Positions 6,473 to 63,859 of a stretch of DNA of 64,000 nucleotides are shown in pieces. The position numbers and the translations under genes are program-made. Below the pieces are notes generated by a model, which worked only from the letters and a program-made list of their open reading frames with translations, was not told where the DNA came from and did not search any database. The stretch's first letter is position 1. Each line of letters begins with the position of its first letter. The stretch covers positions 1 to 64,000 of IMG/VR virus record IMGVR_UViG_3300023174_000039. The stretch is one strand, 5' to 3'.

Positions 6473-6501
6473 TAGACTTGCGATAAAAATTCTGTTATAC
6501 T
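6473..6501 (+). promoter_or_regulatory. Sigma70-type promoter, probably leaderless
   Basis: TAGACT-N17-TATACT, 6 nt before the ATG at 6508. Confidence 0.6.
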
Positions 6502-6507
6502 TGCAGT

Positions 6508-7032
6508 ATGGCAGACTTAATGATCGACTTAGAAGGGCTTGCTACAGGCCCAGACACTACAATACTAACTATTGCGGCCCAGAGCTTTGACCCTTTTGGG
6601 CAAGGCCACTCTGGCCAGAGTTACTATGCCAGAGTCACACTAGAAAGCCAAGAAGATCGCGCTATTGATCAAGGCACAATTGATTGGTGGGCTACACAAC
6701 CTGCTGTGGTTCGAGACGAAGCATTCAATGAACAAGACCGCATCCCATTGGATCAAGCTCTAGATGGGTTAGGTCGGCTGATTTGGCACTCCAACAGAAT
6801 CTGGGCCCAAGGACCCACGTATGACATGAACATTCTGGAGCATGCCTACAAGAGCTATCGCAAGCCCTTGCCTTGGAAATACTACATGGTGCGTGATAGC
6901 CGTACGGTGTTTAGCTTGTGGCCTGATCAGCCTATCCCGCCCACCAGCCACCATGCCCTAGAAGACTGCCGCAGACAAATTGGCATGCTACAACACACAC
7001 TAAAACATCTTGGGGTTACTGCGCTGAAGTAG
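6508..7032 (+). CDS. DEDDh 3'-5' exonuclease (DexA/RNase AS-like)
   Basis: MIDLEGL, GPTYDM, RDSRT and HHALEDC motifs. Confidence 0.85.
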   Translation: MADLMIDLEGLATGPDTTILTIAAQSFDPFGQGHSGQSYYARVTLESQEDRAIDQGTIDWWATQPAVVRDEAFNEQDRIPLDQALDGLGRLIWHSNRIWAQGPTYDMNILEHAYKSYRKPLPWKYYMVRDSRTVFSLWPDQPIPPTSHHALEDCRRQIGMLQHTLKHLGVTALK

Positions 7033-8986
7033 GTTTAGGTCTTGACCAAGTACCACTGCCTGTCCACGGTAGCCTAAACGTAAATTCCTTACCAAATTCA
7101 ATTGGTGGATGGTCCTGACCGTCTATAAAAATCTCATGGTCAAAATCTGCAGTCCACTCACCACTGCTGTTGATGTTGAACTGATATCTGGCTCGATAGT
7201 AACTGTTTATTCTTGGCAAATTAAAAGCACCCAGTTCTTGTGTGTCATGTGCAGGGTCAAATTTTAAATCAAGTTCATACGGGCCCAACGCCAACCACAA
7301 CACACGAAGCAGCGGCCAGATTTCGTTGACCACAGTGACATTCAATGGATGGTCATCAATTTTAATAATGTTAAAATCAAACTGTTCATATGGTATATCT
7401 GTAATGATATTTTCAGGATCGTAACTGAGCGTGTAGTGTTCAGGCTTTTCCAGTCCTGGGCGCTCGTTCAGTGTTTCGTATGTTACACTGCGATTCTTAA
7501 TAAGATGATTGAGAATAACGTTGACAGACTTGTAGCGTATGAGACGTTGAAAAATAGTGTTGGTATAGTCGTCAGTTTTCCATTGATGTGTTAGATTGTG
7601 GTTGGAAATGCCAAATTTTGATCTTTCATAGTTCAGAGGAGTGTCCATGCCAATTTGGCAAGTGCCAAAACTACGCCCAAAAATATTACAATTACGTGTG
7701 CGCCACAACAAGGTCATGGTGTCAGCAACATCATTATATCCCTCGCCAGGAAATCCCACAAACCAATTTGTGTGTGACCGAATTCCTACAGTGGTAAAGT
7801 CTTTGAGATTTTGTTCTATATCATTGCGTTTGACATTCTTTTTCATGACGTCCAACACATGCTGGCTTCCTGACTCTACACCAAAACTCAGCATGTTGCA
7901 GCCACCGTTTTTGAGATCATTAATGTAGTCGAGATCCATGCGCCCGTCACATCTGGCGTACCCCATCCAACTCAGATGAATGTTTCGTTCAACCAATCCT
8001 TTTGCAAATGCACTTAGTTCTTTTAAATTGCCATTGATCAAACTGTCAATAAACCACACGCTGTCAATGCCCAAGGTTTTGTATTGGTGTTCTAATTCAT
8101 CCAGTATGTTGTTTGCTTGTCGGCCGCGGTATCTCCAAAATGTTGTTTCACTGCAAAACTGACATTTGGCCACACACCCGCGACTCAGTTCAGCACTTAC
8201 TCCATTTTGTTGATACAATGATAAATCTAAATCAGAGTAGTCTGGGTACGGCAAGCTGTCAAGATCAATACGTATGCTCTTGTCATGCACAAGGAATTTT
8301 TCAGTAACAGGAATGTTATTCTCAATCTTCTCCATCAAGTCCAAGAAAATTGCTTCGCCCTCTCCTACCACAATGTGGTCAATGATATCGGTGTTTTCTA
8401 TTTTTTCTTGAATAGCAGTTGGGCCGCCTGCTATAATAATAGTGTCGGGCAGCCTGCTACGAATTTGATTGATCATCCAGGTCGTGGCTTTGTTGCTGGT
8501 GGTAAAAATACTGAAGCCCATGACATCTGGTTTGAACGCCACAATCTTGTCAAGGTATTCATTCAGTATAGGTTCAATAAGAGGATGTACATCGGTGTAA
8601 TAACTGTCAGTGGTCCACACCCAGTCCTTGTATCCACTCCAGTACGCTTGATCTATTTTTGAATAACACACAGCATTGATATCGTATGCAACTGTTTCAA
8701 ATCCGCTATCTCGGCTGAGTGCAGTTATTCTAGCCAAATTGTAAGGAGGGATGTACGGAGCCCATTCAGGTAAAATAGCCAATGCCACACGAGTTTTTCG
8801 TGTCACTTGCCGATTGACCACTACCTGGGTTAGATTTTTTTGGGGCTTTGATCGGCCTGCACTGTCTAATTGCAATGCTTTGAGCATGGCCAAATCTCGA
8901 GCACCACCGTCGCTGTTGTTTACTATCTTGGTTAAATCAGGCTCAACTTTATCTGAAGTGGTCAATATATCAAATATTTTATTCAT
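7016..8986 (-). CDS. B12-binding domain radical SAM enzyme (class B methyltransferase-like)
   Basis: PDVMGFS and IIAGGP (B12-binding), SRGCVAKCQFC (CxxxCxxC), FGVESGSQHVL, VGFPGE. Confidence 0.9.
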   Translation of the reverse strand: MNKIFDILTTSDKVEPDLTKIVNNSDGGARDLAMLKALQLDSAGRSKPQKNLTQVVVNRQVTRKTRVALAILPEWAPYIPPYNLARITALSRDSGFETVAYDINAVCYSKIDQAYWSGYKDWVWTTDSYYTDVHPLIEPILNEYLDKIVAFKPDVMGFSIFTTSNKATTWMINQIRSRLPDTIIIAGGPTAIQEKIENTDIIDHIVVGEGEAIFLDLMEKIENNIPVTEKFLVHDKSIRIDLDSLPYPDYSDLDLSLYQQNGVSAELSRGCVAKCQFCSETTFWRYRGRQANNILDELEHQYKTLGIDSVWFIDSLINGNLKELSAFAKGLVERNIHLSWMGYARCDGRMDLDYINDLKNGGCNMLSFGVESGSQHVLDVMKKNVKRNDIEQNLKDFTTVGIRSHTNWFVGFPGEGYNDVADTMTLLWRTRNCNIFGRSFGTCQIGMDTPLNYERSKFGISNHNLTHQWKTDDYTNTIFQRLIRYKSVNVILNHLIKNRSVTYETLNERPGLEKPEHYTLSYDPENIITDIPYEQFDFNIIKIDDHPLNVTVVNEIWPLLRVLWLALGPYELDLKFDPAHDTQELGAFNLPRINSYYRARYQFNINSSGEWTADFDHEIFIDGQDHPPIEFGKEFTFRLPWTGSGTWSRPKPTSAQ

Positions 8987-8990
8987 AGTG

Positions 8991-8996
8991 TATTTA
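8991..8996 (-). promoter_or_regulatory. Late promoter TAAATA
   Basis: TAAATA 4 nt before the ATG at 8986. Confidence 0.65.
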
Positions 8997-9074
8997 CATC
9001 GTTGTCTCTAGACCATCAAATCAAACGGCTAATTGCCAGTTGATTTGTATTTTTGTTTGTGCTAATATACAACT

Positions 9075-9605
9075 ATGTCAACAACTCATACATCACATCT
9101 TCCAAAACTGCTAATCATCGGCAATGCTCGTCACGGCAAAGACACTGTGTGCGATATTCTGCGTAAAGAATTTGGTTACTCATTCCGTTCAAGCTCGGAC
9201 TTTTGTGCCGAAAAGTTTATCTACAACGAGCTCAAACTCAAGTACGGTTATACCTCCTATGCCCAGTGTTTTGAAGATCGACACAATCACAGAGCTGAGT
9301 GGTACAACATGATTCATGAATACTGTCGAGATGACTATGCTAGATTGGGTAGAGAAATTTTTGCTGAAAATTCTATCTATTGCGGTCTTCGCAACAAGTC
9401 AGAATTCCATGCTATGAAGAATACACAGGTATTTGATTATGCTGTTTGGGTGGATCGTAGCGACCACTTGCCTGTAGAAGATCGTTCAAGTATGAGCTTG
9501 GAAATTTGGATGGCCGACTACGTGATTGACAACAATGGTGGATTACAAGATCTGCGTCGCAATACCTGTGAATTAATGACCGCACTGTTAAAGATCCACA
9601 GATAG
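9075..9605 (+). CDS. Deoxynucleoside monophosphate kinase-like P-loop protein (T4 gp1-like)
   Basis: IIGNARHGKDT Walker A, GLRNKSEF, ADYVIDNNG. Confidence 0.7.
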   Translation: MSTTHTSHLPKLLIIGNARHGKDTVCDILRKEFGYSFRSSSDFCAEKFIYNELKLKYGYTSYAQCFEDRHNHRAEWYNMIHEYCRDDYARLGREIFAENSIYCGLRNKSEFHAMKNTQVFDYAVWVDRSDHLPVEDRSSMSLEIWMADYVIDNNGGLQDLRRNTCELMTALLKIHR

Positions 9606-9932
9606 ATCACCAGGTTTCCAGGGTAACGTGCTCTTAGACACTTCTTCTACGCAATTACGACAAATGCACTTTAGATTTTTGACACTAGTGTTGTTTAAGT
9701 TACCATCAACATGATATACTAGAATCTGACTAGAGTATCGGGCCTTAAACCCGCACTTGTCACACACGAGCTTTTTTTTAAATCCTGCGGCTTCCCATCG
9801 TGGGATTCTTTTTTTCAGCCCACGATGCTTCCTTGCACAACTCTCGCATCTGGTACGATAGTGTGCAACATCGTTACGATAATAGTTAACAGCACAAGGC
9901 AGTTGATTGCATGCTTGACAAATGGGTCTCAT
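9588..9932 (-). CDS. Zn-binding HNH-like endonuclease domain protein
   Basis: Several CxxC pairs and VYHVDGNLNNTSVKNLKCICRNC (degenerate HNH); TAAATA at 9937-9942. Confidence 0.7.
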   Translation of the reverse strand: MRPICQACNQLPCAVNYYRNDVAHYRTRCESCARKHRGLKKRIPRWEAAGFKKKLVCDKCGFKARYSSQILVYHVDGNLNNTSVKNLKCICRNCVEEVSKSTLPWKPGDLSVDL

Positions 9933-21337: not shown

Positions 21338-21370
21338 TTGACCCCTGGTATCAGGCATGTAAATAACTGC

Positions 21371-22516
21371 ATGTCTGATACTTTCTATTGTGCCGCACCT
21401 TGGCGTGGCCTACACATAAATCCCCGTGGTGATGTTAAAACTTGTTGTGCAGGCGATCCCAACATGCTGGGCAACTTGAACACCAACAACATTATTGAAA
21501 TACTCAACGGAGATCTACTGCAAGAAATTCGCGGTAGCATTGCACAAGGCAAGCCACACAAGTATTGCTCTAACTGCGTACAAGCCGAACGCTTTGGTGC
21601 CGACTCAGAACGCAAATGGCACAACGATCAGAACCAAGATTTAGATTATACGACTGCCGGATCACTGTACCACTATCCTGTTATAGTGGACGTGAGATGG
21701 AATACCACCTGTAACCTTTCATGTAACTACTGTAGTGAATGGGCCAGTTCAAAATGGTCCGCACTCAAAGGTATTCCATTCAAGTCCGGCAGTCGTCCCT
21801 ATTATGATGATGTGTGTGACTTCATTGCGGCGCATCACGAGCACATTCGAGATGTAGCACTTGTGGGCGGTGAGCCCTTGCTGTTACCAGAAAACGAACG
21901 ACTACTAGATGTCATTCCAGAAGATTGTACAGTAACCATCATTACCAACATGAATGTGGATCTTGACCGAAACAAGATCTTCAAGAAACTAGCACAACGT
22001 AAGAAAGTTGGCTGGAGCATGAGCTTTGACAACATTGACGACCGCTTTGAATATGTGCGATATGGCGGCGAGTGGTTACAAGTTGAAAACAACATTGCTA
22101 TAGTCAAAGATTTGTTTTCAAAAGGACACTGGGGCGGCATACATGCAGTGTACAACATCTACAATGCCACACGCATTACAGAATTCCGTGAATGGGCTGT
22201 GGCACGAGGTGTAACTGTACTCTGGCAAAACCTGTTTCAACCTGACTACCTTGATCCATTCTTGCATGGACCTGAAGTTGCTGAACTGGCAGCCGCCGAA
22301 ATTGAGCGATTCTATGCAACAGGACTTGCAACAGATGCAGAGCGCATGTTCTTTGACAATGCATTAAACACTTATCGTAATGTTAAACAAGAACGCCCAG
22401 GCATCACCGCCAAATTTAAACAACACATTGCAGAAATTGAAACAAAATATCATCCAGACAAGTCAGGTGAGTTTGTGAGATGCTGGCCTGAACTTGCGGC
22501 ATTATTAGATAATTAA
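21371..22516 (+). CDS. Radical SAM protein with N-terminal twitch-type Cys domain
   Basis: CAAPW..TCC..CSNC, CNLSCNYC and GGEPL; start at MSDTFYC, 5 nt after TAAATA. Confidence 0.9.
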   Translation: MSDTFYCAAPWRGLHINPRGDVKTCCAGDPNMLGNLNTNNIIEILNGDLLQEIRGSIAQGKPHKYCSNCVQAERFGADSERKWHNDQNQDLDYTTAGSLYHYPVIVDVRWNTTCNLSCNYCSEWASSKWSALKGIPFKSGSRPYYDDVCDFIAAHHEHIRDVALVGGEPLLLPENERLLDVIPEDCTVTIITNMNVDLDRNKIFKKLAQRKKVGWSMSFDNIDDRFEYVRYGGEWLQVENNIAIVKDLFSKGHWGGIHAVYNIYNATRITEFREWAVARGVTVLWQNLFQPDYLDPFLHGPEVAELAAAEIERFYATGLATDAERMFFDNALNTYRNVKQERPGITAKFKQHIAEIETKYHPDKSGEFVRCWPELAALLDN

Positions 22517-29081: not shown

Positions 29082-29347
29082 GCGAAGTAGTAGCAAGCGA
29101 AATTTGGGGTGAACTCAAACGTTTTGTAAACACCGTGGATCGTGCAGAAGCCGCAGAAACTGTGGTACAGATCTTGATGGACAATGATTCAGATGTTGAT
29201 GATATTCGTAGTGCTTTCAAAGGTGATTCAGATATCAAACGTGCGTTGACTGCATACCTTGACAATGACAAAGACTACATCGAAGAAGAAGATGCAGAAG
29301 AAGATGAAGACTTTGACGACTTTGACAAGGACGACTGGGAAAATTAA
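29078..29347 (+). CDS. Small protein with acidic C-terminal tail
   Basis: ATGA-coupled to uvsX; ends in a D/E run. Confidence 0.8.
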   Translation: MSEVVASEIWGELKRFVNTVDRAEAAETVVQILMDNDSDVDDIRSAFKGDSDIKRALTAYLDNDKDYIEEEDAEEDEDFDDFDKDDWEN

Positions 29348-30591
29348 TGTCCTTGACATATTTTCCAATCCGAACTGCAACAAGTTGTCAATTAAAATGG
29401 AATTGGACGGCATTGTACCTCAATGGCGGGTTCTCTCGAACTTGCCATCGTACTGCTGAAACACAATTAACTCCAGAAAATTTTAGTGATTTTCACAATA
29501 CTGAAGTTGTGTTAAGCGATCGTACAAGAATGTTGCAAGGCCTATGGCCAGAGAAAAGTTGTTCGTATTGTAAAAATATTGAAGAAGCAGGCGGAACAAG
29601 TGATCGATTGCGACAAATTGACAATCCAAATTTATCTCCGCCTGAACTTGTTGATGATCCTTCTGCAATTGTAGTAAGTCCCACGGTACTAGAAGTATTT
29701 TTTAATAATACATGCAACCTAGGATGCTTGTACTGCACACCCTCATTGAGTTCTGTGATAAACACTGAAAATCACAAGTTTGGTAACTTTGATCAAAACG
29801 GTGTTTCGTTGACTCCTGTAGACATACACTATAAGGATCTATCTCCACATTTTTGGCAATGGTTTCCTGACGGCTTTCCCAAGCTCAAACGATTTGGAGT
29901 GCTAGGTGGTGAACCGTTCTATCAAAAAGAGTTTGAAAAACTTTTAGACATGATAGAGCAACATCCCAATCCCAATTGCGAACTCAACATCATAACCAAT
30001 CTTATGGTATCTCCGGACAGGTTAAGTATGTTTGTTGAACGTTTTAAAAAACTGTTGCTGACAAAAAAAATAAAACGAGTTGATATAACGTGCAGTATAG
30101 ATTGCTGGGGACCACAACAAGAGTATGTGAGATGGGGAATTGATCTTGAGCAATGGCAACAGAATTTTGAATCTCTAATCAAGCACAAATGGTTGTACAT
30201 TAGTATAAATCAAACTATAACAGCGTTGACTATCAAGACCATGCCTGATTTGTTGCTAAAGTTAAAAGAATGGAACGCTATACGCCCAGTACATCATCAC
30301 TTTAGTGGCCCGTCGCCGACTCCGAGCTACTTTGATGCTGGCATATTAGGCGGCGACGAGTTTAAACATGACTTTGATCAAATATTATCCTTGATGCCAC
30401 AATCTACTGATGAAGATAAAATAACATACAACTACATGTTGGGTATAGCAAATGGCATCGTACAGTCCCGGATTAATCCTGATGAGATTAACAAATTGTT
30501 AACTTATCTTGACGAGAAGGATCGCCGACGTGGCACAGATTGGAAAATATTATTTCCGTGGTTAGTGGAGTATAAAAAATATGTGGTATAG
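29347..30591 (+). CDS. Radical SAM protein, twitch-type
   Basis: CQLKW..TCH..CSYC, CNLGCLYC and GGEPF. Confidence 0.9.
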   Translation: MSLTYFPIRTATSCQLKWNWTALYLNGGFSRTCHRTAETQLTPENFSDFHNTEVVLSDRTRMLQGLWPEKSCSYCKNIEEAGGTSDRLRQIDNPNLSPPELVDDPSAIVVSPTVLEVFFNNTCNLGCLYCTPSLSSVINTENHKFGNFDQNGVSLTPVDIHYKDLSPHFWQWFPDGFPKLKRFGVLGGEPFYQKEFEKLLDMIEQHPNPNCELNIITNLMVSPDRLSMFVERFKKLLLTKKIKRVDITCSIDCWGPQQEYVRWGIDLEQWQQNFESLIKHKWLYISINQTITALTIKTMPDLLLKLKEWNAIRPVHHHFSGPSPTPSYFDAGILGGDEFKHDFDQILSLMPQSTDEDKITYNYMLGIANGIVQSRINPDEINKLLTYLDEKDRRRGTDWKILFPWLVEYKKYVV

Positions 30592-42572: not shown

Positions 42573-43700
42573 ATGACTTTTTGCTATTCCCCTTGGTCCA
42601 ACATTGACATTAGTCCTCAAGGTGACCTCACGCCTTGTTGCAAATTTCAAATGTCCAAGTACAATGAGTCGTTTAATGTGCAAACGCAAACCTTGCCTGA
42701 GTATTTTGGCAGTGCCTTTTTGGCAGAAATCAAGCAAGAATTTGCACAAGGACAATGGCCACGTGGATGTGAACGGTGTCGTATTGAGGAAGAGAACAAC
42801 ATTGCCAGCAAGAGACAATTGGATTATGAACGCTGGCAACAACATTACCAACTGTATGATCTTGCCAGCAGTAAGTGTATCACCGCCAGCATTGCATTTG
42901 GAAACACCTGTAATCTAAAATGCATAACCTGCAGTCCTTACAGTAGCAGTAAATGGCATCAAGAACATCTAAAAATACACAATGTTGATATTGGACCTGT
43001 TAAATTTTACAGGAGTGATTTTGTAGAAAAGTTTATAGACCAGTCACCAGATGTTGTTCATTTGGACATACCCGGAGGCGAACCTTTCCTATCTGGTGTG
43101 CAAGAACAAAAACGCTTGTTGAATCATTATATAACAACAGGACAGGCCAAACATATTAGTTTACATTACACTACCAACGTAACGCTATTTCCTGATCAAG
43201 AGTGGTGGGATATTTGGCAGCATTTTGAGAACGTCGACATCCAACTCAGCATAGACGGAGTGGGCAACAGATATGAGTACATTAGATATCCGGCCAAATG
43301 GGCAGAAGTTGTTGATAACACTGCTCGGTACTTAGAACGGCACCAAGGCAATATCCAGCTTAGTGTAAGTCATACCGTGAGTGCCTACAACATTTATTAT
43401 CTTGATGAATTTTTTACATGGTGCAAACACATGGGATTGCCTGATCCGTGGCTGGGCCGAGTTCATAATCCCATGCACATGCGACCCACAGTATGGCCTA
43501 CTGCTGTCAGAAATCACATTGCTGAACATTTACAATCCAGCAGTTACACACATGTGCGCACCTGGGCACAACTGTTACAAAGCCAAGATGACAGCGAGAA
43601 GTTTGATAAATTTAAGACTTATCTGCTACAGCATGATCAATATAGAGGATTAAACTTTGCAGAAACGTTTCAGGAACTATCGGAGTTTTTAAATGTCTAG
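42573..43700 (+). CDS. Radical SAM protein, twitch-type
   Basis: CYSPW..PCC..CERC, CNLKCITC and GGEPF. Confidence 0.9.
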   Translation: MTFCYSPWSNIDISPQGDLTPCCKFQMSKYNESFNVQTQTLPEYFGSAFLAEIKQEFAQGQWPRGCERCRIEEENNIASKRQLDYERWQQHYQLYDLASSKCITASIAFGNTCNLKCITCSPYSSSKWHQEHLKIHNVDIGPVKFYRSDFVEKFIDQSPDVVHLDIPGGEPFLSGVQEQKRLLNHYITTGQAKHISLHYTTNVTLFPDQEWWDIWQHFENVDIQLSIDGVGNRYEYIRYPAKWAEVVDNTARYLERHQGNIQLSVSHTVSAYNIYYLDEFFTWCKHMGLPDPWLGRVHNPMHMRPTVWPTAVRNHIAEHLQSSSYTHVRTWAQLLQSQDDSEKFDKFKTYLLQHDQYRGLNFAETFQELSEFLNV

Positions 43701-45012
43701 TAGAAAAGACTATCCAATATATCAGGTGCTTGAAGAAAAGAGCAAGTTTTTTTGTCCTGCCAAGTGGACAGAGTTGTTCTTGTATCTCAATCATGGAACC
43801 AGTAATAGTTGTCATCATCCTATTCCACACAACATACCACAAGAGTTGCTGAGCAATCCGGCAGTGTTACACAACACCCCGCACAAGTTAAAAATGCAAC
43901 AGCTCATGATAGACGGAGTCAGGCCAGACGAATGTCACATGTGTTGGCATATAGAAGATGCAGATCCTGACGCTGTGAGTGACCGCATTACCAAAAGTCA
44001 GCACTGGCAAGATAGAATTGCAGGACTTGCAGTTGATCCAGAATATGTGCCGCCATTCATTGAAGTGGTATTTGACAACTATTGTAACCTAACCTGTAGC
44101 TATTGCGACTCCGGGCAAAGCTCATCCTGGGCTGCCAAAGTACACAAACAACCGTTGCACTTGCTCACCGACTATCGTGAGTTGTATTCCAAAATTCATA
44201 TTGCACCCGGAACAACCAAGCAACAGTATCTTGATGCCTGGCTAACCTGGTGGCCAACCATACGTGATCAAGTACAGGTACTCAAAATCAGTGGCGGCGA
44301 GCCATTGATGAGCAAAAACTTTTGGCGCTTTGTTGATGAACTTGGAACAGCACCCAACTTGTCTATTGCCATCAACAGTAATTTTTCTGTGGACCACGAG
44401 TTGGTAAAACGCTTTGCAGCCTATGCACCAAACTTTCGTAAAGTAACAATATCTGCTAGCATTGATGCAACTGAAAGCATTGCAGAATACGCCAGGCAAG
44501 GGCTAAACTACCAGCAATTTTTACACAATGTGCATTATTGGTGCTCAAGTACTCCGGACAATTGTTTCCTCAAACTACAAAGCACAGTCAACGTATTAAA
44601 TGTATGGGGGCTAACTGATAAGTTTGAATTAAACGCACACCTGCGACAACTATATCCTGCTCGTGTGTTGGATTTTTATAGCACAATTGTGCGAGCACCA
44701 GAGTTTCAGTCAATCTTGATACTGCCCAATAATGTCAGACACCAACTTGGTATCCAGATTCAAACTTGGATTAAGCACAATAGTCAGCTGTTGTCATCTG
44801 CGGAAAAGGTACTGGCAAACAAAACTGCAAGCTACCTGGTAAACAACCCGGAACCCATGCACAAGTTTGAGCAACGCCAATTAGAGCTTGACTTTGTGAC
44901 ATTTTTACTGTATTATAATCAAACAAGCAAACTACAATATCAACATGTATACCCTAAAGAATTCTTAGAATGGATAGAAACAATTGAAACAATGCACAAT
45001 ACAAATACGTGA
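43693..45012 (+). CDS. Radical SAM protein, twitch-type
   Basis: CPAKW..SCHH..CHMC, CNLTCSYC and GGEPL. Confidence 0.9.
   Translation: MSSRKDYPIYQVLEEKSKFFCPAKWTELFLYLNHGTSNSCHHPIPHNIPQELLSNPAVLHNTPHKLKMQQLMIDGVRPDECHMCWHIEDADPDAVSDRITKSQHWQDRIAGLAVDPEYVPPFIEVVFDNYCNLTCSYCDSGQSSSWAAKVHKQPLHLLTDYRELYSKIHIAPGTTKQQYLDAWLTWWPTIRDQVQVLKISGGEPLMSKNFWRFVDELGTAPNLSIAINSNFSVDHELVKRFAAYAPNFRKVTISASIDATESIAEYARQGLNYQQFLHNVHYWCSSTPDNCFLKLQSTVNVLNVWGLTDKFELNAHLRQLYPARVLDFYSTIVRAPEFQSILILPNNVRHQLGIQIQTWIKHNSQLLSSAEKVLANKTASYLVNNPEPMHKFEQRQLELDFVTFLLYYNQTSKLQYQHVYPKEFLEWIETIETMHNTNT
44888..44920 (+). repeat. Second copy of the 42530 promoter sequence, embedded in the radical SAM coding region
   Basis: TTGACTTTGTGAC-N5-TACTGTAT is shared with 42530-42555. 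Confidence 0.7.
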
Positions 45013-47700: not shown

Positions 47701-48370
47701 GTTTACCTGTGAGTTTTGTAAAAAAGAGTTTGCACGTGAAAGCTCCATTGCAGTACACATGTGCGAGCCCAAGCGCAGGCGCATGGAACAAAGTGAACGT
47801 GGGGTACAACTGGGCTTTCAAGCCTACATCAAGTTTTACGAACTGGCACAAGGTAGTGCCAAACTAAAAACATTTGAGGACTTTTGTGACTCACCTTACT
47901 ACCGAGCATTTGTCAAGTTTGGCCGCTATTGTGTAAACACACGAGTCATTAATCCTGCACAGTTTATGTCATGGTTATTGAAAAACAACAAGAAAATTGA
48001 CCACTGGTGCAGTGACAAAATCTACACTGAGTACTTGTTGTTTTATCTACGAGTAGAAGCTGTAGCAGATGCCCTGGCTCGTGCAATAGAGTACAGTATT
48101 GACTGGAGTGAAAAGACCACGCACCCTGCATATGATTGCATGCGTTATGGTAATATCAATTTGCTATGTCATGCTGTGACAACAGGACGTATATCGCCCT
48201 GGGTGATTTATAATTCAGCATCTGGACAAGAGTTCTTGAACAACCTGGACTCTTCTCAGATTGCAATGATCTGGCCCTACATTGATAGTGATGCGTGGCA
48301 AAAGAAATTCCATGACTACTCAGCGGATCAAGAGTATGCCAAAGAGATTTTGAGGCAAGCAGGATGGTGA
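47681..48370 (+). CDS. C2H2-like zinc finger-containing hypothetical protein
   Basis: FTCEFCKKEF....HMC at the N-terminus. Confidence 0.7.
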   Translation: MDETPSKFTCEFCKKEFARESSIAVHMCEPKRRRMEQSERGVQLGFQAYIKFYELAQGSAKLKTFEDFCDSPYYRAFVKFGRYCVNTRVINPAQFMSWLLKNNKKIDHWCSDKIYTEYLLFYLRVEAVADALARAIEYSIDWSEKTTHPAYDCMRYGNINLLCHAVTTGRISPWVIYNSASGQEFLNNLDSSQIAMIWPYIDSDAWQKKFHDYSADQEYAKEILRQAGW

Positions 48371-49866
48371 CTAGAAAACTTTGCCTTGGCAACAATACCG
48401 AACTTACTGATCAACAGACAAGAAAACTAGCAGCCGAGCAAGGCACAATTTGTCACGGGCTGTTGAGCGAGCTAGACGGTGAAATCGCAAACTACTCAGT
48501 TGACGGGTTTTATCATAGTAGCGTGTATGATATAATGCCAGGAAGATTGCGAGAAATTTGTTTAGATATTGGGCATGTAATAGTATTGCCGCAAACAAAG
48601 TCAGATTATCAAGATCCAGAATCATTTTATCAAACAGTTCAATTGTGTAAACAGCTAGAGACAACCATCACTGTGGAATGGTTAGATCCAGAAATTAAAA
48701 ATACAAATCAATTTTTTGAACAGCTGGTCAATACCAATAGCAGTTTTTGCATCTATCCCTTTATTGAGTTATTGGTACAGAATGGTTCTACTACTGTATG
48801 TTGTAGATCATCTAATCCGGTAACAGAACTAAGTCAACTGAAAGACTACGGAACTGATCCAGGGTACACTGCTATTAGAGATAAAATGTTACAAGGTGTA
48901 CGTGTTCCAGAACATTGTTCTGCATGCTATAAACTAGAAAATGTTGGGATCACGAGTCCCAGGAAACAAGAAACAATTGAATGGGCAAACAGATTAGGAC
49001 TCAATGGCCTAGAAGATTTGCAACAAATTACACAACCTGTGTATTACGAAATTAGACCAAGCAACATATGCAATTTGCAATGCAGGATGTGCTCTCCGAC
49101 TTACAGTCATCTTATTGATCAAGAATACCAACAGTTGGGATTATCGGCACCTATAAAGATCGACCACACTGGATTTGATATTGTGGATATCAACAATGTT
49201 AACAAACTCTATGTGGCTGGAGGAGAACCAATGGCCATGCCTGATTTTTATGAATTTGTAGACCAATGTATTGATACTCATAACACTGATTTTGAATTTG
49301 TTATAAACACAAATGGTACCAAGTTAAGCGATCGGTTTAAACGTCAACTACAGCACTTCTCTCGAATGCAGTTTATTGTAAGCATTGACGGGGCTGATCG
49401 ACTAAATCACTATATTAGATGGCCCAGTAACTGGAGCACAATAGTAGACAATGTCACTTACTTGGTCACAAACAATTACTATGTGACATTCAACGTTACT
49501 GTGAGCATGTACAATGTACTGGATTTAAATAATCTGTTTAGATTTTTTGAACAACATTGGCCGAGGCAGGCAGTGCATTTACAATTGGCGGGATCTCGAG
49601 ATGATTATCTGTCAGCATTTAACCACCCGTCAAGCGACTTGGTAGTACATATGTTGACACAATCTCAACAGACTGCCACCTATCGTGACAATGCATTGGT
49701 AGCAAACTTTGTTGACACAATGCTAGCCCATTACAAAAATAACCATCAATGTGATTTGGTAAAACTTAAAAAATTCTTTGAGATAAATGACAAGTTAGAT
49801 CAATCAAGGAACATATATCTTGAGGACTACTTGCCCGATCTGTCTAACGCCAGGAGCATGATATGA
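48364..49866 (+). CDS. Radical SAM protein, twitch-type, with extra N-terminal domain
   Basis: CIYPF..VCC..CSAC, CNLQCRMC and GGEPM. Confidence 0.9.
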   Translation: MVTRKLCLGNNTELTDQQTRKLAAEQGTICHGLLSELDGEIANYSVDGFYHSSVYDIMPGRLREICLDIGHVIVLPQTKSDYQDPESFYQTVQLCKQLETTITVEWLDPEIKNTNQFFEQLVNTNSSFCIYPFIELLVQNGSTTVCCRSSNPVTELSQLKDYGTDPGYTAIRDKMLQGVRVPEHCSACYKLENVGITSPRKQETIEWANRLGLNGLEDLQQITQPVYYEIRPSNICNLQCRMCSPTYSHLIDQEYQQLGLSAPIKIDHTGFDIVDINNVNKLYVAGGEPMAMPDFYEFVDQCIDTHNTDFEFVINTNGTKLSDRFKRQLQHFSRMQFIVSIDGADRLNHYIRWPSNWSTIVDNVTYLVTNNYYVTFNVTVSMYNVLDLNNLFRFFEQHWPRQAVHLQLAGSRDDYLSAFNHPSSDLVVHMLTQSQQTATYRDNALVANFVDTMLAHYKNNHQCDLVKLKKFFEINDKLDQSRNIYLEDYLPDLSNARSMI

Positions 49867-62269: not shown

Positions 62270-62662
62270 ATGGCATACTCACAAAAAGTTGTAGACCACT
62301 ACGAAAACCCACGCAACGTGGGTTCCTTCTCCAAGGACGACACTGACATTGGCACAGGCATGGTAGGTGCTCCTGCCTGCGGTGATGTAATGAAATTGCA
62401 GATCAAAGTTGTAGATGGAATAATTACAGATGCACGATTTAAAACATATGGCTGCGGGTCAGCCATTGCATCAAGTTCATTGATCACTGAAATGGTCAAA
62501 GGCATGACACTAGATAATGCTTCACAAATTAAAAACTCAGAAATTGCTGAAGAACTAGCACTACCTCCTGTAAAAATACACTGTAGTATTCTTGCAGAAG
62601 ATGCTATCAAAGCCGCAGTTGAAGACTACAGAAAGAAACATGACACAACGCATCTTAATTGA
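62270..62662 (+). CDS. iscU: Fe-S cluster scaffold IscU
   Basis: MAYSQKVVDHYENPRNVG, GAPACGDVM, TYGCGSA and LPPVKIHCS. Confidence 0.98.
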   Translation: MAYSQKVVDHYENPRNVGSFSKDDTDIGTGMVGAPACGDVMKLQIKVVDGIITDARFKTYGCGSAIASSSLITEMVKGMTLDNASQIKNSEIAEELALPPVKIHCSILAEDAIKAAVEDYRKKHDTTHLN

Positions 62663-63539
62663 CAAACTGGAATTTTATGTTACAAACGTTTGTAACTTGA
62701 CCTGCAACGGGTGTAACCGCTACAATAATTATAAATTTGCCGGATGGCAAAGTTGGGACGAATATGGCCCCATACTAGAACGCTGGGCAGAAAAAATTGA
62801 TATCCGCCATCCTGTTATTCTTGGCGGCGAGCCATTGCTCAATCCAGAAATCAACAAGTGGGTGGAAGGACTAAAACGCTTGTGGCCCGACCATTCCGGC
62901 GTACAAATTCAGAGCAACGGCACACGAATTGACAAGGTCAAGGGTTTGTATGAAGCTCTGGGCAACGGGCAAGGACACTGGATTGGTATCAGCATACACA
63001 ATCCCGACGACAAAGAAGAAATCTTTTCACGCATTAGAAACTTCTTGACAGCACCCATTACAGAAACCAGTGATCCCAATCATCCCATTGGTTCAGACTT
63101 TCAGTTTACTGACGTAAACAAAAACTATGTGCATGCCTGGATGAGCAACAAGTTTGTACAAAGTAATATTTTAGAATTGCCCAATGGAAGATTTGGACTG
63201 TACAACAGCGATCCTGTCAAGGCACATGACAATTGTGCCTTTGCTAGATTTAAAAACTATCACATGATCCGTGGCAAGATCTACAAGTGCGGCCCTGCTG
63301 CCTTGATGCCAGAATTTGATGAGCAGTATCAATTTGATATCTCGGACGAAGATCGATTGTTGATGAAAGGTTACAAGCCCTTGGCCATTGACGAGTTTGA
63401 CACACGTGGTGCTGAGTTCTTGGGCAATATTGACAATGTGATTGATCAATGCAAATTTTGCCCAGAATCATATGACTACAAACCTATTACTTTCACCAAC
63501 TTGAAAAAGAACTGGAAGAAAGATGATGTTGTAGCATGA
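62640..63539 (+). CDS. Radical SAM protein with C-terminal Cys cluster
   Basis: CNLTCNGC and GGEPLL; C..KC..CKFC at the C-terminus. Confidence 0.9.
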   Translation: MTQRILIDKLEFYVTNVCNLTCNGCNRYNNYKFAGWQSWDEYGPILERWAEKIDIRHPVILGGEPLLNPEINKWVEGLKRLWPDHSGVQIQSNGTRIDKVKGLYEALGNGQGHWIGISIHNPDDKEEIFSRIRNFLTAPITETSDPNHPIGSDFQFTDVNKNYVHAWMSNKFVQSNILELPNGRFGLYNSDPVKAHDNCAFARFKNYHMIRGKIYKCGPAALMPEFDEQYQFDISDEDRLLMKGYKPLAIDEFDTRGAEFLGNIDNVIDQCKFCPESYDYKPITFTNLKKNWKKDDVVA

Positions 63540-63859
63540 TCTCTGTAACAGATATTGCAGCCAATAAAATCTTAAAGAGCATTGCCAAACGCGGCCGAGG
63601 GCAAGGCATTCAAGTAGGTGTTAGAACTACAGGTTGCTCAGGCCTGGCCTACGTGCTAGAATATGTAGACAACCCCAACTTACATTGTGTTAGACACTAC
63701 GATAGCAATGGGGTTAGGATATTTGTAGATCCCAAGAACATACCTTATCTTGACGGCATGATTATCGATTTCAAAAGAAATGGCCTCAATGAAGGCTTTG
63801 AATTTATCAACAAAAATGAACGTGACCGCTGTGGTTGCGGAGAATCTTTTCGAGTGTAA
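63536..63859 (+). CDS. iscA: A-type Fe-S carrier IscA
   Basis: TTGCSGLAY and CGCGESF. Confidence 0.97.
   Translation: MISVTDIAANKILKSIAKRGRGQGIQVGVRTTGCSGLAYVLEYVDNPNLHCVRHYDSNGVRIFVDPKNIPYLDGMIIDFKRNGLNEGFEFINKNERDRCGCGESFRV

What the first reader, a model, noticed from the sequence alone, without database searches (positions are those of the whole stretch)
7016..8996. Cobalamin-dependent radical SAM enzyme as an antisense late cassette
A 656-aa class B-like enzyme lies on the opposite strand between the exonuclease and dNMP kinase genes. It overlaps the exonuclease 3' end by 17 nt and has its own TAAATA 4 nt before the ATG. Class B enzymes methylate unactivated C or P atoms. It would make a phage function depend on host B12, and it has an unexplained C-terminal extension of roughly 200 aa.
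Basis: partly seen in the sequence, partly recalled or inferred. Interest (0 to 1): 0.6.

Follow-up and report, generated by a model that had tools for sequence, protein, structure and literature searches.

The report
Phage cobalamin radical SAM gene cassette
A 331-kb freshwater T4-like jumbo phage carries, as a movable single-gene insert with a late-type promoter, a virus-only version of a vitamin-B12-type radical SAM enzyme with a C-terminal domain that matches no solved structure; it most likely tailors a phage-made sugar or glycan.

Summary
Window 7016-8986 (-) is an intact 656-aa ORF with a B12-binding Rossmann domain, a radical SAM barrel (CxxxCxxC at residues 271-278) and a conserved 190-aa C-terminal domain. 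It overlaps the exonuclease gene by 17 nt, and TAAATA ends 4 nt before its ATG.

The "cassette" reading is now shown by comparison. In 54 of 80 close relatives the exonuclease and dNMP kinase genes abut. Homology to them stops at window 7010/7011 and resumes at 9099, so about 2,087 bp are an insert.

TAAATA ending 4-7 nt before a start codon occurs at 25 genes (about 0.4 expected), including tail genes. The flanking genes have sigma70-like -10 boxes instead.

The protein family (348 IMG/VR contigs) looks virus-only, and dN/dS is 0.03-0.04. The C-terminal domain has no match among solved structures.

The gene is accessory: one complete relative lacks it, and another carries it elsewhere. The phage also has 17 other radical SAM genes and two Fe-S carrier genes. 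A CobS search found nothing.

In distant members the gene sits in operons with nucleotide-sugar enzymes, a carbamoyltransferase and a glycosyltransferase. A late glycan-tailoring C-methylase is therefore the best guess, at moderate confidence. Transcription and B12 binding remain untested.

The parts
7012..9098 (.). Inserted segment (cassette), about 2,087 bp. It holds the B12-radical SAM gene, its TAAATA element, a new sigma70-like promoter and the first 8 codons of the dNMP kinase gene.
   Evidence: blastn to empty-site relatives L187, L190 and L209: homology ends at window 7010/7011 and resumes at 9099, and the relatives have 23-24 nt there. 54 of 80 relatives have exonuclease and kinase adjacent. 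Contigs from the same lakes branch off at 7005-7010 into the empty-site sequence (table 7).
7016..8986 (-). ORF of 656 aa (P0001): a cobalamin-binding-domain radical SAM enzyme (class B type). The stop codon is included.
8807..8986 (-). N-terminal leader, residues 1-60. Predicted disordered up to residue 45, with a conserved QKNLT-like motif at residues 49-53.
   Evidence: pLDDT below 50 for residues 1-45; Q49 and K50 nearly invariant
8282..8800 (-). Rossmann-type B12-binding domain, residues about 63-235. G187 and G188 are invariant; no DxHxxG motif.
   Evidence: Pfam PF02310 above cut-off; strand-helix pattern in the model; alignment A1
7577..8203 (-). Radical SAM barrel, residues about 262-470.
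   Evidence: Pfam PF04055; fold matches; invariant F312, D314, S315, L316 and E371, S372, G373, S374
8153..8176 (-). CxxxCxxC [4Fe-4S] motif, residues 271-278 (C271, C275 and C278 invariant).
7019..7576 (-). Family-specific C-terminal alpha/beta domain, residues about 471-656.
   Evidence: Model pLDDT 90.2. No solved-structure match: Foldseek best E 0.05, VIA best Z 4.1. In the ESM Atlas only viral B12-radical SAM clusters match (TM 0.63 and 0.56). No Pfam hit. dN/dS 0.054. Found only inside this family.
8991..8996 (-). TAAATA, a T4-late-promoter-like element 4 nt upstream of the ATG.
   Evidence: Genome-wide, 25 genes have it ending 4-7 nt before the start codon, against about 0.4 expected. 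It, or an ATAAGTA variant, is kept before orthologues in distant phages.
9040..9068 (+). Sigma70-like promoter for the dNMP kinase gene: TTGATT, 17-nt spacer with TG, TAATAT, ending 6 nt before the ATG at 9075. It lies inside the insert.
   Evidence: read from the sequence. Same layout as the full-consensus TTGACC-N17-TGCTATAAT sites that end 5-6 nt before other ATGs in this genome. It scores 8 of 12, below the tool's 9-of-12 threshold.
6508..7032 (+). Left flank: exonuclease-like gene. Its last codons and stop lie inside the insert boundary and overlap the 3' end of the radical SAM gene.
   Evidence: phrog_255; sigma70-like site 6473-6501 with TG
9075..9605 (+). Right flank: dNMP-kinase-like gene. 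In empty-site relatives it is coupled to the exonuclease gene by an ATGA overlap.

Best explanation
Window 7016-8986 (-) encodes a working enzyme of a virus-only clade of class B (cobalamin-binding-domain) radical SAM proteins. It has a Rossmann B12 domain, a [4Fe-4S]/SAM barrel and a clade-specific C-terminal domain that probably caps the active site and selects the substrate. The gene is an accessory, exchangeable single-gene cassette (window about 7012-9098). It was inserted antisense between the exonuclease and dNMP kinase genes of a freshwater T4-like jumbo phage. It is read from its own T4-late-type TAAATA element, which sits so close to the ATG that the mRNA should be leaderless or nearly so. 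The most likely chemistry is cobalamin-mediated C-methylation, or a related radical tailoring step, on a sugar or nucleotide-sugar of a phage-made glycan. It would act late in infection alongside the phage's many N-twitch radical SAM enzymes, using host cobalamin and phage-supplied Fe-S carriers. Shown: the ORF, its domains, conservation, the virus-only distribution, the insert boundaries, the motif enrichment and the operon contexts. Inferred: cobalamin use, late timing, the leaderless mRNA and the sugar substrate.
For: Domains and fold. Selection: dN/dS 0.03-0.04, and 0.054 for the C-terminal domain. Virus-only distribution: 348 IMG/VR contigs. The nearest ESM Atlas clusters are 100% Viruses. 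Among 185,579 species genomes the best hit is 36% identical over residues 44-461, on a contig of phage-like gene content, and the other hits listed are 33% identical or less and match no further than about residue 565. The C-terminal domain was found only within this family. Cassette. Its identity is discordant with the backbone: L185 has flanks 97-99% identical but the enzyme only 65%, while L235 has flanks 81-88% but the enzyme 92%. One complete relative, G006, lacks the gene, and G001 has it at another site. Late-type element; sigma70-like elements on the flanking genes. Sugar context: in at least 15 distant loci the gene, often as two paralogues, lies in co-directional operons with NAD epimerase/dehydratase, UDP-glucose/GDP-mannose dehydrogenase, DegT aminotransferase, carbamoyltransferase and GT4 glycosyltransferase. 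The nearest MAG copy sits with a cytidylyltransferase, a sulfotransferase and a carbamoyltransferase. Another phage has cupin, cytidylyltransferase, sugar kinase and epimerase genes 4-7 kb away. The window's own genome carries the same gene families at 202-211 kb and 243-269 kb. Cofactor supply: one B12 domain, no CobS, and two A-type Fe-S carrier genes. From established knowledge, class B enzymes such as GenK and GenD1 C-methylate sugars.
Against: No NCBIfam subfamily reaches its cut-off, so sequence gives no substrate. In the window's own clade the gene is not next to sugar genes but in the neck/tail module, and the sugar-operon members are only 40-43% identical, so the substrate may differ. 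The best fold hit, OxsB, acts on a deoxyadenosine nucleotide, and MgmA and TsrM act on protein or an amino acid. In some phages a paralogue lies directly upstream of a QueE/QueD-type 7-deazapurine cluster. Not all class B-type proteins use cobalamin or methylate; AprD4 and OxsB are in the hit list. No RNA data exist. TAAATA could be a translation signal rather than a promoter. A complete relative does without the gene, so it is not essential.
Confidence: 0.45

Rival explanations
1. The enzyme C-methylates, or otherwise modifies, a protein or peptide. The target would be a virion protein or one of the giant proteins encoded beside the radical SAM clusters, as Mmp10/MgmA, PoyB/C and TsrM-type enzymes do for proteins, peptides and amino acids.
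For: Fold hits include MgmA (9ccb) and TsrM. The NCBIfam RiPP C-methyltransferase model scores as high as any other (100.7 bits). The gene lies in the neck/tail structural module with a late-type element. The companion N-twitch radical SAMs weakly resemble SPASM/twitch peptide maturases. Giant ORFs of 1,000-2,000 aa accompany the clusters.
Against: No precursor-peptide-like small ORF is conserved next to the gene. No RRE or peptide-binding domain was found. The conserved operon partners are nucleotide-sugar enzymes.
Confidence: 0.2
2. The enzyme acts on a nucleotide or a 7-deazapurine intermediate, for example in phage DNA or nucleoside hypermodification.
For: The top fold hit, OxsB, works on deoxyadenosine phosphates. 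In L042, L045 and L048 a paralogue sits directly upstream of F7, a QueE-like and an F25 gene, and L073 holds QueE-like and F25 genes in the same cluster. The window's genome has GTP cyclohydrolase I, PTPS/QueD, a QueE-like gene and a SAM methyltransferase at 204-210 kb. In the window the gene lies between nucleotide-metabolism genes.
Against: The genome has no TGT/DpdA and no QueC. The position next to the kinase is a secondary insertion, not a conserved linkage. The OxsB match is no better than those to TsrM, MgmA or CysS.
Confidence: 0.15
3. It is a host-metabolism gene (AMG) of a known pathway, for example BchE (anaerobic Mg-protoporphyrin cyclase, as JGI's automatic names say), a hopanoid methylase or a P-methyltransferase.
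For: JGI names several homologues 'anaerobic magnesium-protoporphyrin IX monomethyl ester cyclase'. Weak NCBIfam hits include BchE, HpnJ/HpnR and PhpK.
Against: All scores are far below the cut-offs: BchE 93.7 against 481, PhpK 104 against 600, HpnR 44.6 against 650. No close cellular homologue exists from which it could have been captured. The C-terminal domain is absent from cellular relatives.
Confidence: 0.05
4. The ORF is a silent or decaying passenger.
For: It is accessory and absent from a complete relative. No RNA evidence is available.
Against: dN/dS is 0.03-0.04 over the whole length. All catalytic motifs are invariant in 29 diverse sequences. The upstream element is conserved. The ORF is intact in independent samples.
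Confidence: 0.02

Closest known systems
Structurally solved class B (cobalamin-dependent) radical SAM enzymes: OxsB (5ul4), TsrM (6wte), MgmA (9ccb), CysS (9n1b), TokK (7kdy)
   Same: The order is an N-terminal Rossmann B12 domain, a CxxxCxxC radical SAM barrel and a C-terminal cap. Foldseek E-values are 1e-14 to 2.5e-11 over 450-540 columns. As usual for the class, there is no DxHxxG His-on motif.
   Different: Sequence identity is only 14-20%. The C-terminal domain has no counterpart in any of them or elsewhere among solved structures. There is an extra 60-residue N-terminal leader. The clade is virus-only.
Sugar C-methylating class B enzymes of aminoglycoside pathways (GenK, GenD1, Fms7), from general knowledge
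   Same: They would be the functional analogy: cobalamin-dependent C-methylation of an unactivated sugar carbon within a cluster of nucleotide-sugar and aminotransferase genes.
   Different: Those are bacterial secondary-metabolite enzymes, not phage genes.
B12-binding radical SAM protein of Streptomyces phage SF3 (NC_028952) and two uncultured gut phage contigs
   Same: These are the only hits in 50,697 deposited phage records, and they are B12 + radical SAM proteins.
   Different: They are 22-27% identical over 28-49% of the query, with no C-terminal domain match. They are not the same family.
T4-like marine environmental phage genome with 12 radical SAM genes plus Fe-S assembly genes (Nishimura et al. 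2017, PMC5332604)
   Same: A T4-like uncultured phage carrying many radical SAM genes together with A-type Fe-S carrier genes. The window's genome has 18 radical SAM genes and 2 carrier genes.
   Different: That paper does not describe a cobalamin-type member or any function. It concerns marine phages; this one is from fresh water.
T4 late promoters (TATAAATA at -10) and phage morons (single genes with their own promoter inserted between conserved genes)
   Same: A TAAATA core precedes sheath, tube and gp13-like genes and this gene. The insert is a single gene with its own signal between two conserved genes, with empty sites in relatives.
   Different: The element sits 4-7 nt from the ATG, so a leaderless mRNA is implied. 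T4 late genes have leaders with Shine-Dalgarno sites. No transcript mapping exists. The insert also rewired the downstream kinase gene with a new promoter.

Membership tests
Class B (cobalamin-dependent) radical SAM enzymes | Radical SAM core with a CxxxCxxC cluster motif and SAM-binding motifs | tested here: met
   PF04055 at 58.7 bits. C271, C275 and C278 are invariant, and the FxDSL and ESGS motifs are invariant. The barrel is modelled at high confidence.
Class B (cobalamin-dependent) radical SAM enzymes | N-terminal Rossmann-type cobalamin-binding domain | tested here: met
   PF02310 at 41.5 bits against a cut-off of 32.1. The fold superposes on OxsB, TsrM, TokK and CysS. The GG motif (G187, G188) is invariant.
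Class B (cobalamin-dependent) radical SAM enzymes | Actually binds cobalamin and uses it in catalysis | not testable with these tools
   This needs purified protein and spectroscopy. Some proteins with this domain (AprD4) do not use cobalamin.
BchE (anaerobic Mg-protoporphyrin IX monomethyl ester cyclase), the name given by JGI to homologues | Score above the equivalog cut-off of TIGR02026 | tested here: not met
   93.7 bits against a cut-off of 481.35
PhpK-family P-methyltransferases / RiPP C-methyltransferases / lipid 'ladder' B12-radical SAM | Score above the NCBIfam cut-off | tested here: not met
   104.4 against 600, 100.7 against 281.85 and 101.1 against 360
T4-type late promoter | TATAAATA-like -10 element upstream of late (structural) genes | tested here: inconclusive
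   The TAAATA core is 30-fold enriched within 16 nt of start codons. It is present before the sheath (full TATAAATA), tube and gp13-like genes. Here the sequence is TGTAAATA, 6 of 8 matches. No transcript data exist, and no gp55 or gp33 homologue was searched for.
Moron-like accessory cassette | Present or absent between conserved neighbours in close relatives, with its own expression signal | tested here: met
   54 of 80 relatives have the empty site and 2 of 80 the filled site. The breakpoints are clean at 7010/7011 and 9099. It has its own TAAATA.
Nucleotide-sugar / glycan tailoring pathway enzyme | Conserved operon linkage with nucleotide-sugar enzymes | tested here: inconclusive
   Met for the distant members at 40-43% identity and for the nearest MAG copy. 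Not met in the window's own clade, where the gene stands alone in the tail module.

The most novel reading that the evidence does not exclude
A virus-only clade of cobalamin radical SAM enzymes, with a C-terminal substrate domain that matches no solved structure, works together with the 6-19 N-twitch radical SAM paralogues of these freshwater and marine jumbo phages. Together they would build a hypermodified product (a glycan, or a sugar-linked 7-deazapurine nucleoside) not yet described in any virus. Because the gene is a swappable cassette that needs host B12, its presence or absence would tune the phage to hosts or waters with or without cobalamin.
Probability: 0.3. Interest if true: 0.8.

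Novelty: new variant of a known kind. Interest (0 to 1): 0.62.

Why it matters
Cobalamin-dependent radical SAM enzymes carry out some of the hardest alkylations in biology, and few have known substrates. Here a large family (348 viral contigs) is confined to viruses. It has a confidently folded C-terminal domain with no match among solved structures, and natural filled-site and empty-site phage variants coexist in the same lakes. That is a ready-made comparison for finding the product.

The finding would also be a rare case of a phage function that depends on a vitamin the phage apparently cannot make. This links phage fitness to B12 availability in fresh water.

Finally, it draws attention to jumbo phages that devote about 18 genes to radical SAM chemistry. 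That trait was noted in 2017 and remains unexplained.

Tried and rejected
- **Deposited phage genomes.** Near-identity DNA search gave no match. tblastn found only four weak partial hits.
- **Named subfamilies.** All NCBIfam scores are far below their cut-offs. The BchE name given by JGI is rejected.
- **amoC-phages of Qin et al. 2026** (bioRxiv 10.64898/2026.06.18.733297). Rejected: no AmoC in the genome, and the window's GC is 39-48% against 36-39% for those phages.
- **'Moraphages'** (PMC12619734). No sign of a link.
- **C-terminal domain fold.** Foldseek on PDB gave a best E of 0.05, to colicin M. VIA-align against 48,161 chains gave a best Z of 4.1. Pfam found nothing. No architecture outside this family was found; only gene fragments on short contigs.
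- **Conserved neighbour F7.** It has no Pfam or PDB sequence match. Its SGNH-hydrolase-like motifs are my reading of the consensus only.
- **Neighbours F4, F17 and F39.** These are frequent neighbours in one subclade but absent from the window's genome, so they are not obligatory partners.
- **CobS, TGT/DpdA and QueC.** All absent.
- **PA5oct literature.** It reports only sigma70-like promoters, so it gives no help on the late motif.
- **Not run.** No alternative genetic code was needed.
Full report
**Observation.** The minus strand of window 7016-8986 carries an uninterrupted 656-codon frame with an ATG start. Its 3' end overlaps by 17 nt (7016-7032) the 3' end of the plus-strand ORF 6508-7032, which is an exonuclease by PHROG (phrog_255, E 2e-40). 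On the minus strand, TAAATA (8996-8991) is followed by four bases and the ATG. The plus-strand gene on the other side (9075-9605) is dNMP-kinase-like by PHROG; Pfam DNMK is only faint.

**The protein.** Pfam places a B12-binding domain at residues 142-216 and a Radical_SAM domain at residues 267-427, both above their curated cut-offs. NCBIfam returns only B12-radical SAM models (PhpK, lipid 'ladder', RiPP C-methyltransferase, BchE, BzaD, ApyD), each at about 100 bits against cut-offs of 280-750. The class is therefore clear but no named subfamily fits.

In an alignment of 29 homologues at 44-80% identity, C271, C275 and C278, the FxDSL and ESGS motifs and G187/G188 are invariant. So are about twenty positions beyond residue 470. 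An AlphaFold model built on that alignment has pLDDT 84.7 and pTM 0.82, with only residues 1-45 disordered. Foldseek puts it with OxsB, TsrM, MgmA, CysS, TokK and AprD4, at E 1e-14 to 6e-11.

The C-terminal 195 residues were modelled alone and gave pLDDT 90.2, a helical hairpin on an antiparallel sheet. They match nothing among solved structures (Foldseek best E 0.05; VIA best Z 4.1) and nothing in Pfam. In the ESM Atlas they superpose only on other viral B12-radical SAM clusters. A profile search with this domain alone found only fragments of the same family. Known class B enzymes carry a substrate-capping domain at this position, so that is the likely role here; this is an inference.

**A virus-only family under strong selection.**
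- More than 120 full-length homologues were listed, several on contigs of 145-347 kb.
- 348 IMG/VR contigs encode a relative.
- The nearest ESM Atlas clusters are 100% viral.
- Among one genome for each of 185,579 prokaryote species, the best hit is 36% identical over residues 44-461. It lies on a 44-kb MAG contig whose genes look like the phage clusters.
- Plainly cellular relatives, such as a 460-aa Halobacteriovorax protein in a housekeeping context, are about 31% identical and lack the C-terminal domain.
- Deposited phage genomes hold nothing close.
- Against two orthologues 92% identical in protein, dN/dS is 0.03-0.04, and 0.054 for the C-terminal part.

**The cassette.** The window is the first 64 kb of a 331,654-bp IMG/VR record rated 95% complete. 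Its tail sheath is closest to the PA5oct, Atu_ph07 and Vibrio 2.275.O jumbo phages, and gp13- and gp15-type neck genes flank the locus.

I used the exonuclease as bait and fetched 80 related loci. In 54 of them the exonuclease and kinase genes are directly adjacent, and only two have the radical SAM gene between them. In the empty-site phage L187 the two genes share an ATGA stop/start overlap.

Nucleotide homology between the window and the empty-site loci L187, L190 and L209 runs to 7010/7011 and resumes at 9099. The relatives have 23-24 nt in that interval. The window therefore carries a 2,087-bp insert. It holds the enzyme gene, its TAAATA, a new sigma70-like promoter (TTGATT-N17-TAATAT, 9040-9068) and eight new first codons for the kinase.

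Contigs from two lake studies reproduce the filled form without a single difference. Other contigs from the same samples branch at 7005-7010 into the empty-site sequence, so both forms coexist.

The cassette's history is discordant with its backbone. L185 has flanks 97-99% identical to the window but an enzyme only 65% identical. L235 has flanks 81-88% identical but an enzyme 92% identical. A 320-kb relative (G001) has the empty site here and a 55%-identical copy at 245 kb. A complete 346,856-bp relative with terminal repeats (G006) has no copy at all. Other relatives carry a different radical SAM-like gene inserted between the kinase and the next gene. A further subclade has the B12 enzyme right after gp13. 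The gene is thus accessory, mobile among related phages, and repeatedly lodged in the neck/tail module in antisense orientation.

**Expression signal.** In a simple gene call of the whole genome (392 ORFs), TAAATA ends 4-7 nt before the start codon of 25 genes, where about 0.4 are expected. Within 16 nt of starts it is 30-fold enriched, on a par with Shine-Dalgarno words. The motif also precedes:
- the sheath gene, as a full TATAAATA;
- the tube and gp13-like genes, further upstream and followed by a Shine-Dalgarno site;
- the conserved 114-aa antisense gene at 9588-9932;
- two other radical SAM genes.

The exonuclease and kinase genes, and several genes elsewhere, instead have sigma70-type elements that end 5-6 nt before the ATG. 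Some of these are full TTGACC-N17-TGCTATAAT sites. TAAATA, or an ATAAGTA variant, at the same distance precedes orthologues in many distant phages. By analogy with T4, where TATAAATA is the late -10 element, the enzyme gene is probably late and its mRNA leaderless or nearly so. That remains an inference: no RNA run contains this DNA.

**The genomic setting.** The phage encodes 18 radical SAM proteins with intact CxxxCxxC motifs, six of them besides P0001 in the window. Most belong to NCBIfam NF033640, the N-terminal-twitch radical SAM family. All five other large B12-enzyme-bearing phage records tested have 6-19 of these. G006, which lacks the B12 enzyme, still has 19 radical SAM matches, so the big set is a lineage trait and the B12 enzyme an add-on. 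The genome has two A-type Fe-S carrier genes, one of them (63536-63859) right after a radical SAM gene. It has no CobS and no second B12-binding domain. Nishimura et al. (PMC5332604) noted a T4-like marine genome with 12 radical SAM genes and Fe-S assembly genes, without explaining it.

**What it probably does.** In the window's clade the neighbours say nothing about function, because the gene is an insert. In members 40-43% identical, often present as 640-aa and 750-aa paralogues in tandem, the gene lies in long co-directional operons. These hold:
- three or four N-twitch radical SAMs;
- an NAD epimerase/dehydratase;
- a UDP-glucose/GDP-mannose dehydrogenase;
- a DegT aminotransferase;
- a carbamoyltransferase;
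- a GT4 glycosyltransferase;
- a 1,000-2,000-aa protein of unknown nature;
- a 256-aa protein (F7) that is the gene's most constant neighbour.

The MAG copy sits with a cytidylyltransferase, a sulfotransferase, a 2OG oxygenase and a carbamoyltransferase. Another phage has cupin, cytidylyltransferase, sugar kinase and epimerase genes a few kb away. The window's genome has the same families at 202-211 kb and 243-269 kb. Class B enzymes that C-methylate sugars are known (GenK, GenD1; general knowledge). I therefore favour a late-acting tailoring step, most simply C-methylation, on a sugar of a phage-made glycan. My confidence in this is about 0.45.

**Rivals.**
- Protein or peptide methylation. 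This fits the structural-module location, the giant ORFs and the MgmA/TsrM fold hits. However, no precursor peptide or recognition domain is conserved.
- A nucleotide or 7-deazapurine substrate. This fits the OxsB top hit and the paralogues that sit next to QueE- and QueD-like genes. The genome has GTP cyclohydrolase I, PTPS/QueD and a QueE-like gene, but it lacks TGT/DpdA and QueC.
- A captured host pathway gene such as BchE. This is rejected by the scores and by the lack of any close cellular source.
- A dead passenger. This is rejected by the selection data.

**Novelty.** The enzyme class is known. The following were not found in the held literature:
- a large virus-only clade;
- a C-terminal domain with no match among solved structures;
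- the cassette behaviour, with natural empty sites;
- the pairing with expanded N-twitch radical SAM sets.

I rate it a new variant of a known kind.

**Limits.** Cobalamin binding, activity, timing and substrate are all untested. Structure and family-search quotas were exhausted before F7 and the giant proteins could be examined.

Noticed in passing
window 21338-22516, 29347-30591, 42573-43700, 43693-45012, 48364-49866, 62592-63539 (all +); 11 more elsewhere in the genome: The phage encodes 18 radical SAM proteins with intact CxxxCxxC motifs. Most are members of NCBIfam NF033640 (N-terminal twitch domain + radical SAM), above its cut-off. Related jumbo phages have 6-19 each.
   Followed up: partly
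window 63536-63859 (+); also genome 138508-138828: There are two A-type Fe-S cluster carrier genes (PF01521, 53 bits each). One lies directly downstream of a radical SAM gene. The phage seems to bring Fe-S delivery for its radical SAM load.
   Followed up: partly
window 6473-6501 (exonuclease), 9040-9068 (kinase); the same pattern by eye just upstream of 46491 and 52726; genome 115782, 128620, 214089, 240765: Sigma70-type promoters, some with the full TTGACC-N17-TGCTATAAT consensus, end only 5-6 nt before the ATG. Many early genes would therefore be made as leaderless mRNAs. A second, TAAATA-type class sits at the same distance before late-looking genes.
   Followed up: partly
window 9588-9932 (-): A 114-aa antisense gene between the kinase and sheath genes is conserved in nearly all relatives. 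It also has TAAATA 4 nt before its ATG. It gives only a weak HNH-like PHROG hit (E 4e-4).
   Followed up: no
L195:2428-3920 and the same slot in L191, L194, L196, L198-L201, L207-L215: Relatives without the B12 cassette carry a different insert of about 1.5 kb between the kinase and the 114-aa gene. It encodes another radical SAM-like protein, 22-25% identical to P0001 residues 164-445. The locus is a hot spot for radical SAM gene insertion.
   Followed up: partly
genome 204462-210385 (outside the window; locus L095:4462-10385): A cluster of GTP cyclohydrolase I, a HIT protein, PTPS/QueD, a weak GT2 hit, a SAM methyltransferase, F7, a QueE-like radical SAM and a cytidylyltransferase-like gene. 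The genome has no TGT/DpdA and no QueC. This is a 7-deazapurine-type pathway with no known way into DNA.
   Followed up: partly
genome 243088-249231 (-) and 274994-289804 (-) (outside the window): Giant ORFs of 2,047 and 4,936 aa. The 2,047-aa one, which has no Pfam or informative PHROG hit, belongs to a family (F12) that regularly ends the radical SAM/sugar operons of related phages. The 4,936-aa ORF was not scanned against any family library.
   Followed up: no
L095:7930-8658 (F7) and its homologues next to the B12 enzyme in L073-L088: A 256-aa protein family with no Pfam or PDB sequence match. Its consensus (GCSFT ... GxSGxGN ... DxHPxPxxH) looks to me like the SGNH-hydrolase blocks. It is the most constant neighbour of the B12 enzyme in distant phages.
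   Followed up: partly
window 7005-7010 in runs X1, X2, X6: Contigs from the same lake samples leave the window's sequence at 7005-7010 and continue with the empty-site junction. Phage variants with and without the cassette coexist in the same samples.
   Followed up: yes
window 10004 (tail sheath start): The listed TTG start of the 1,140-aa sheath ORF abuts a full TATAAATA with no spacer, so the true start may be elsewhere. The sheath is unusually long and aligns with those of PA5oct and Atu_ph07.
   Followed up: no
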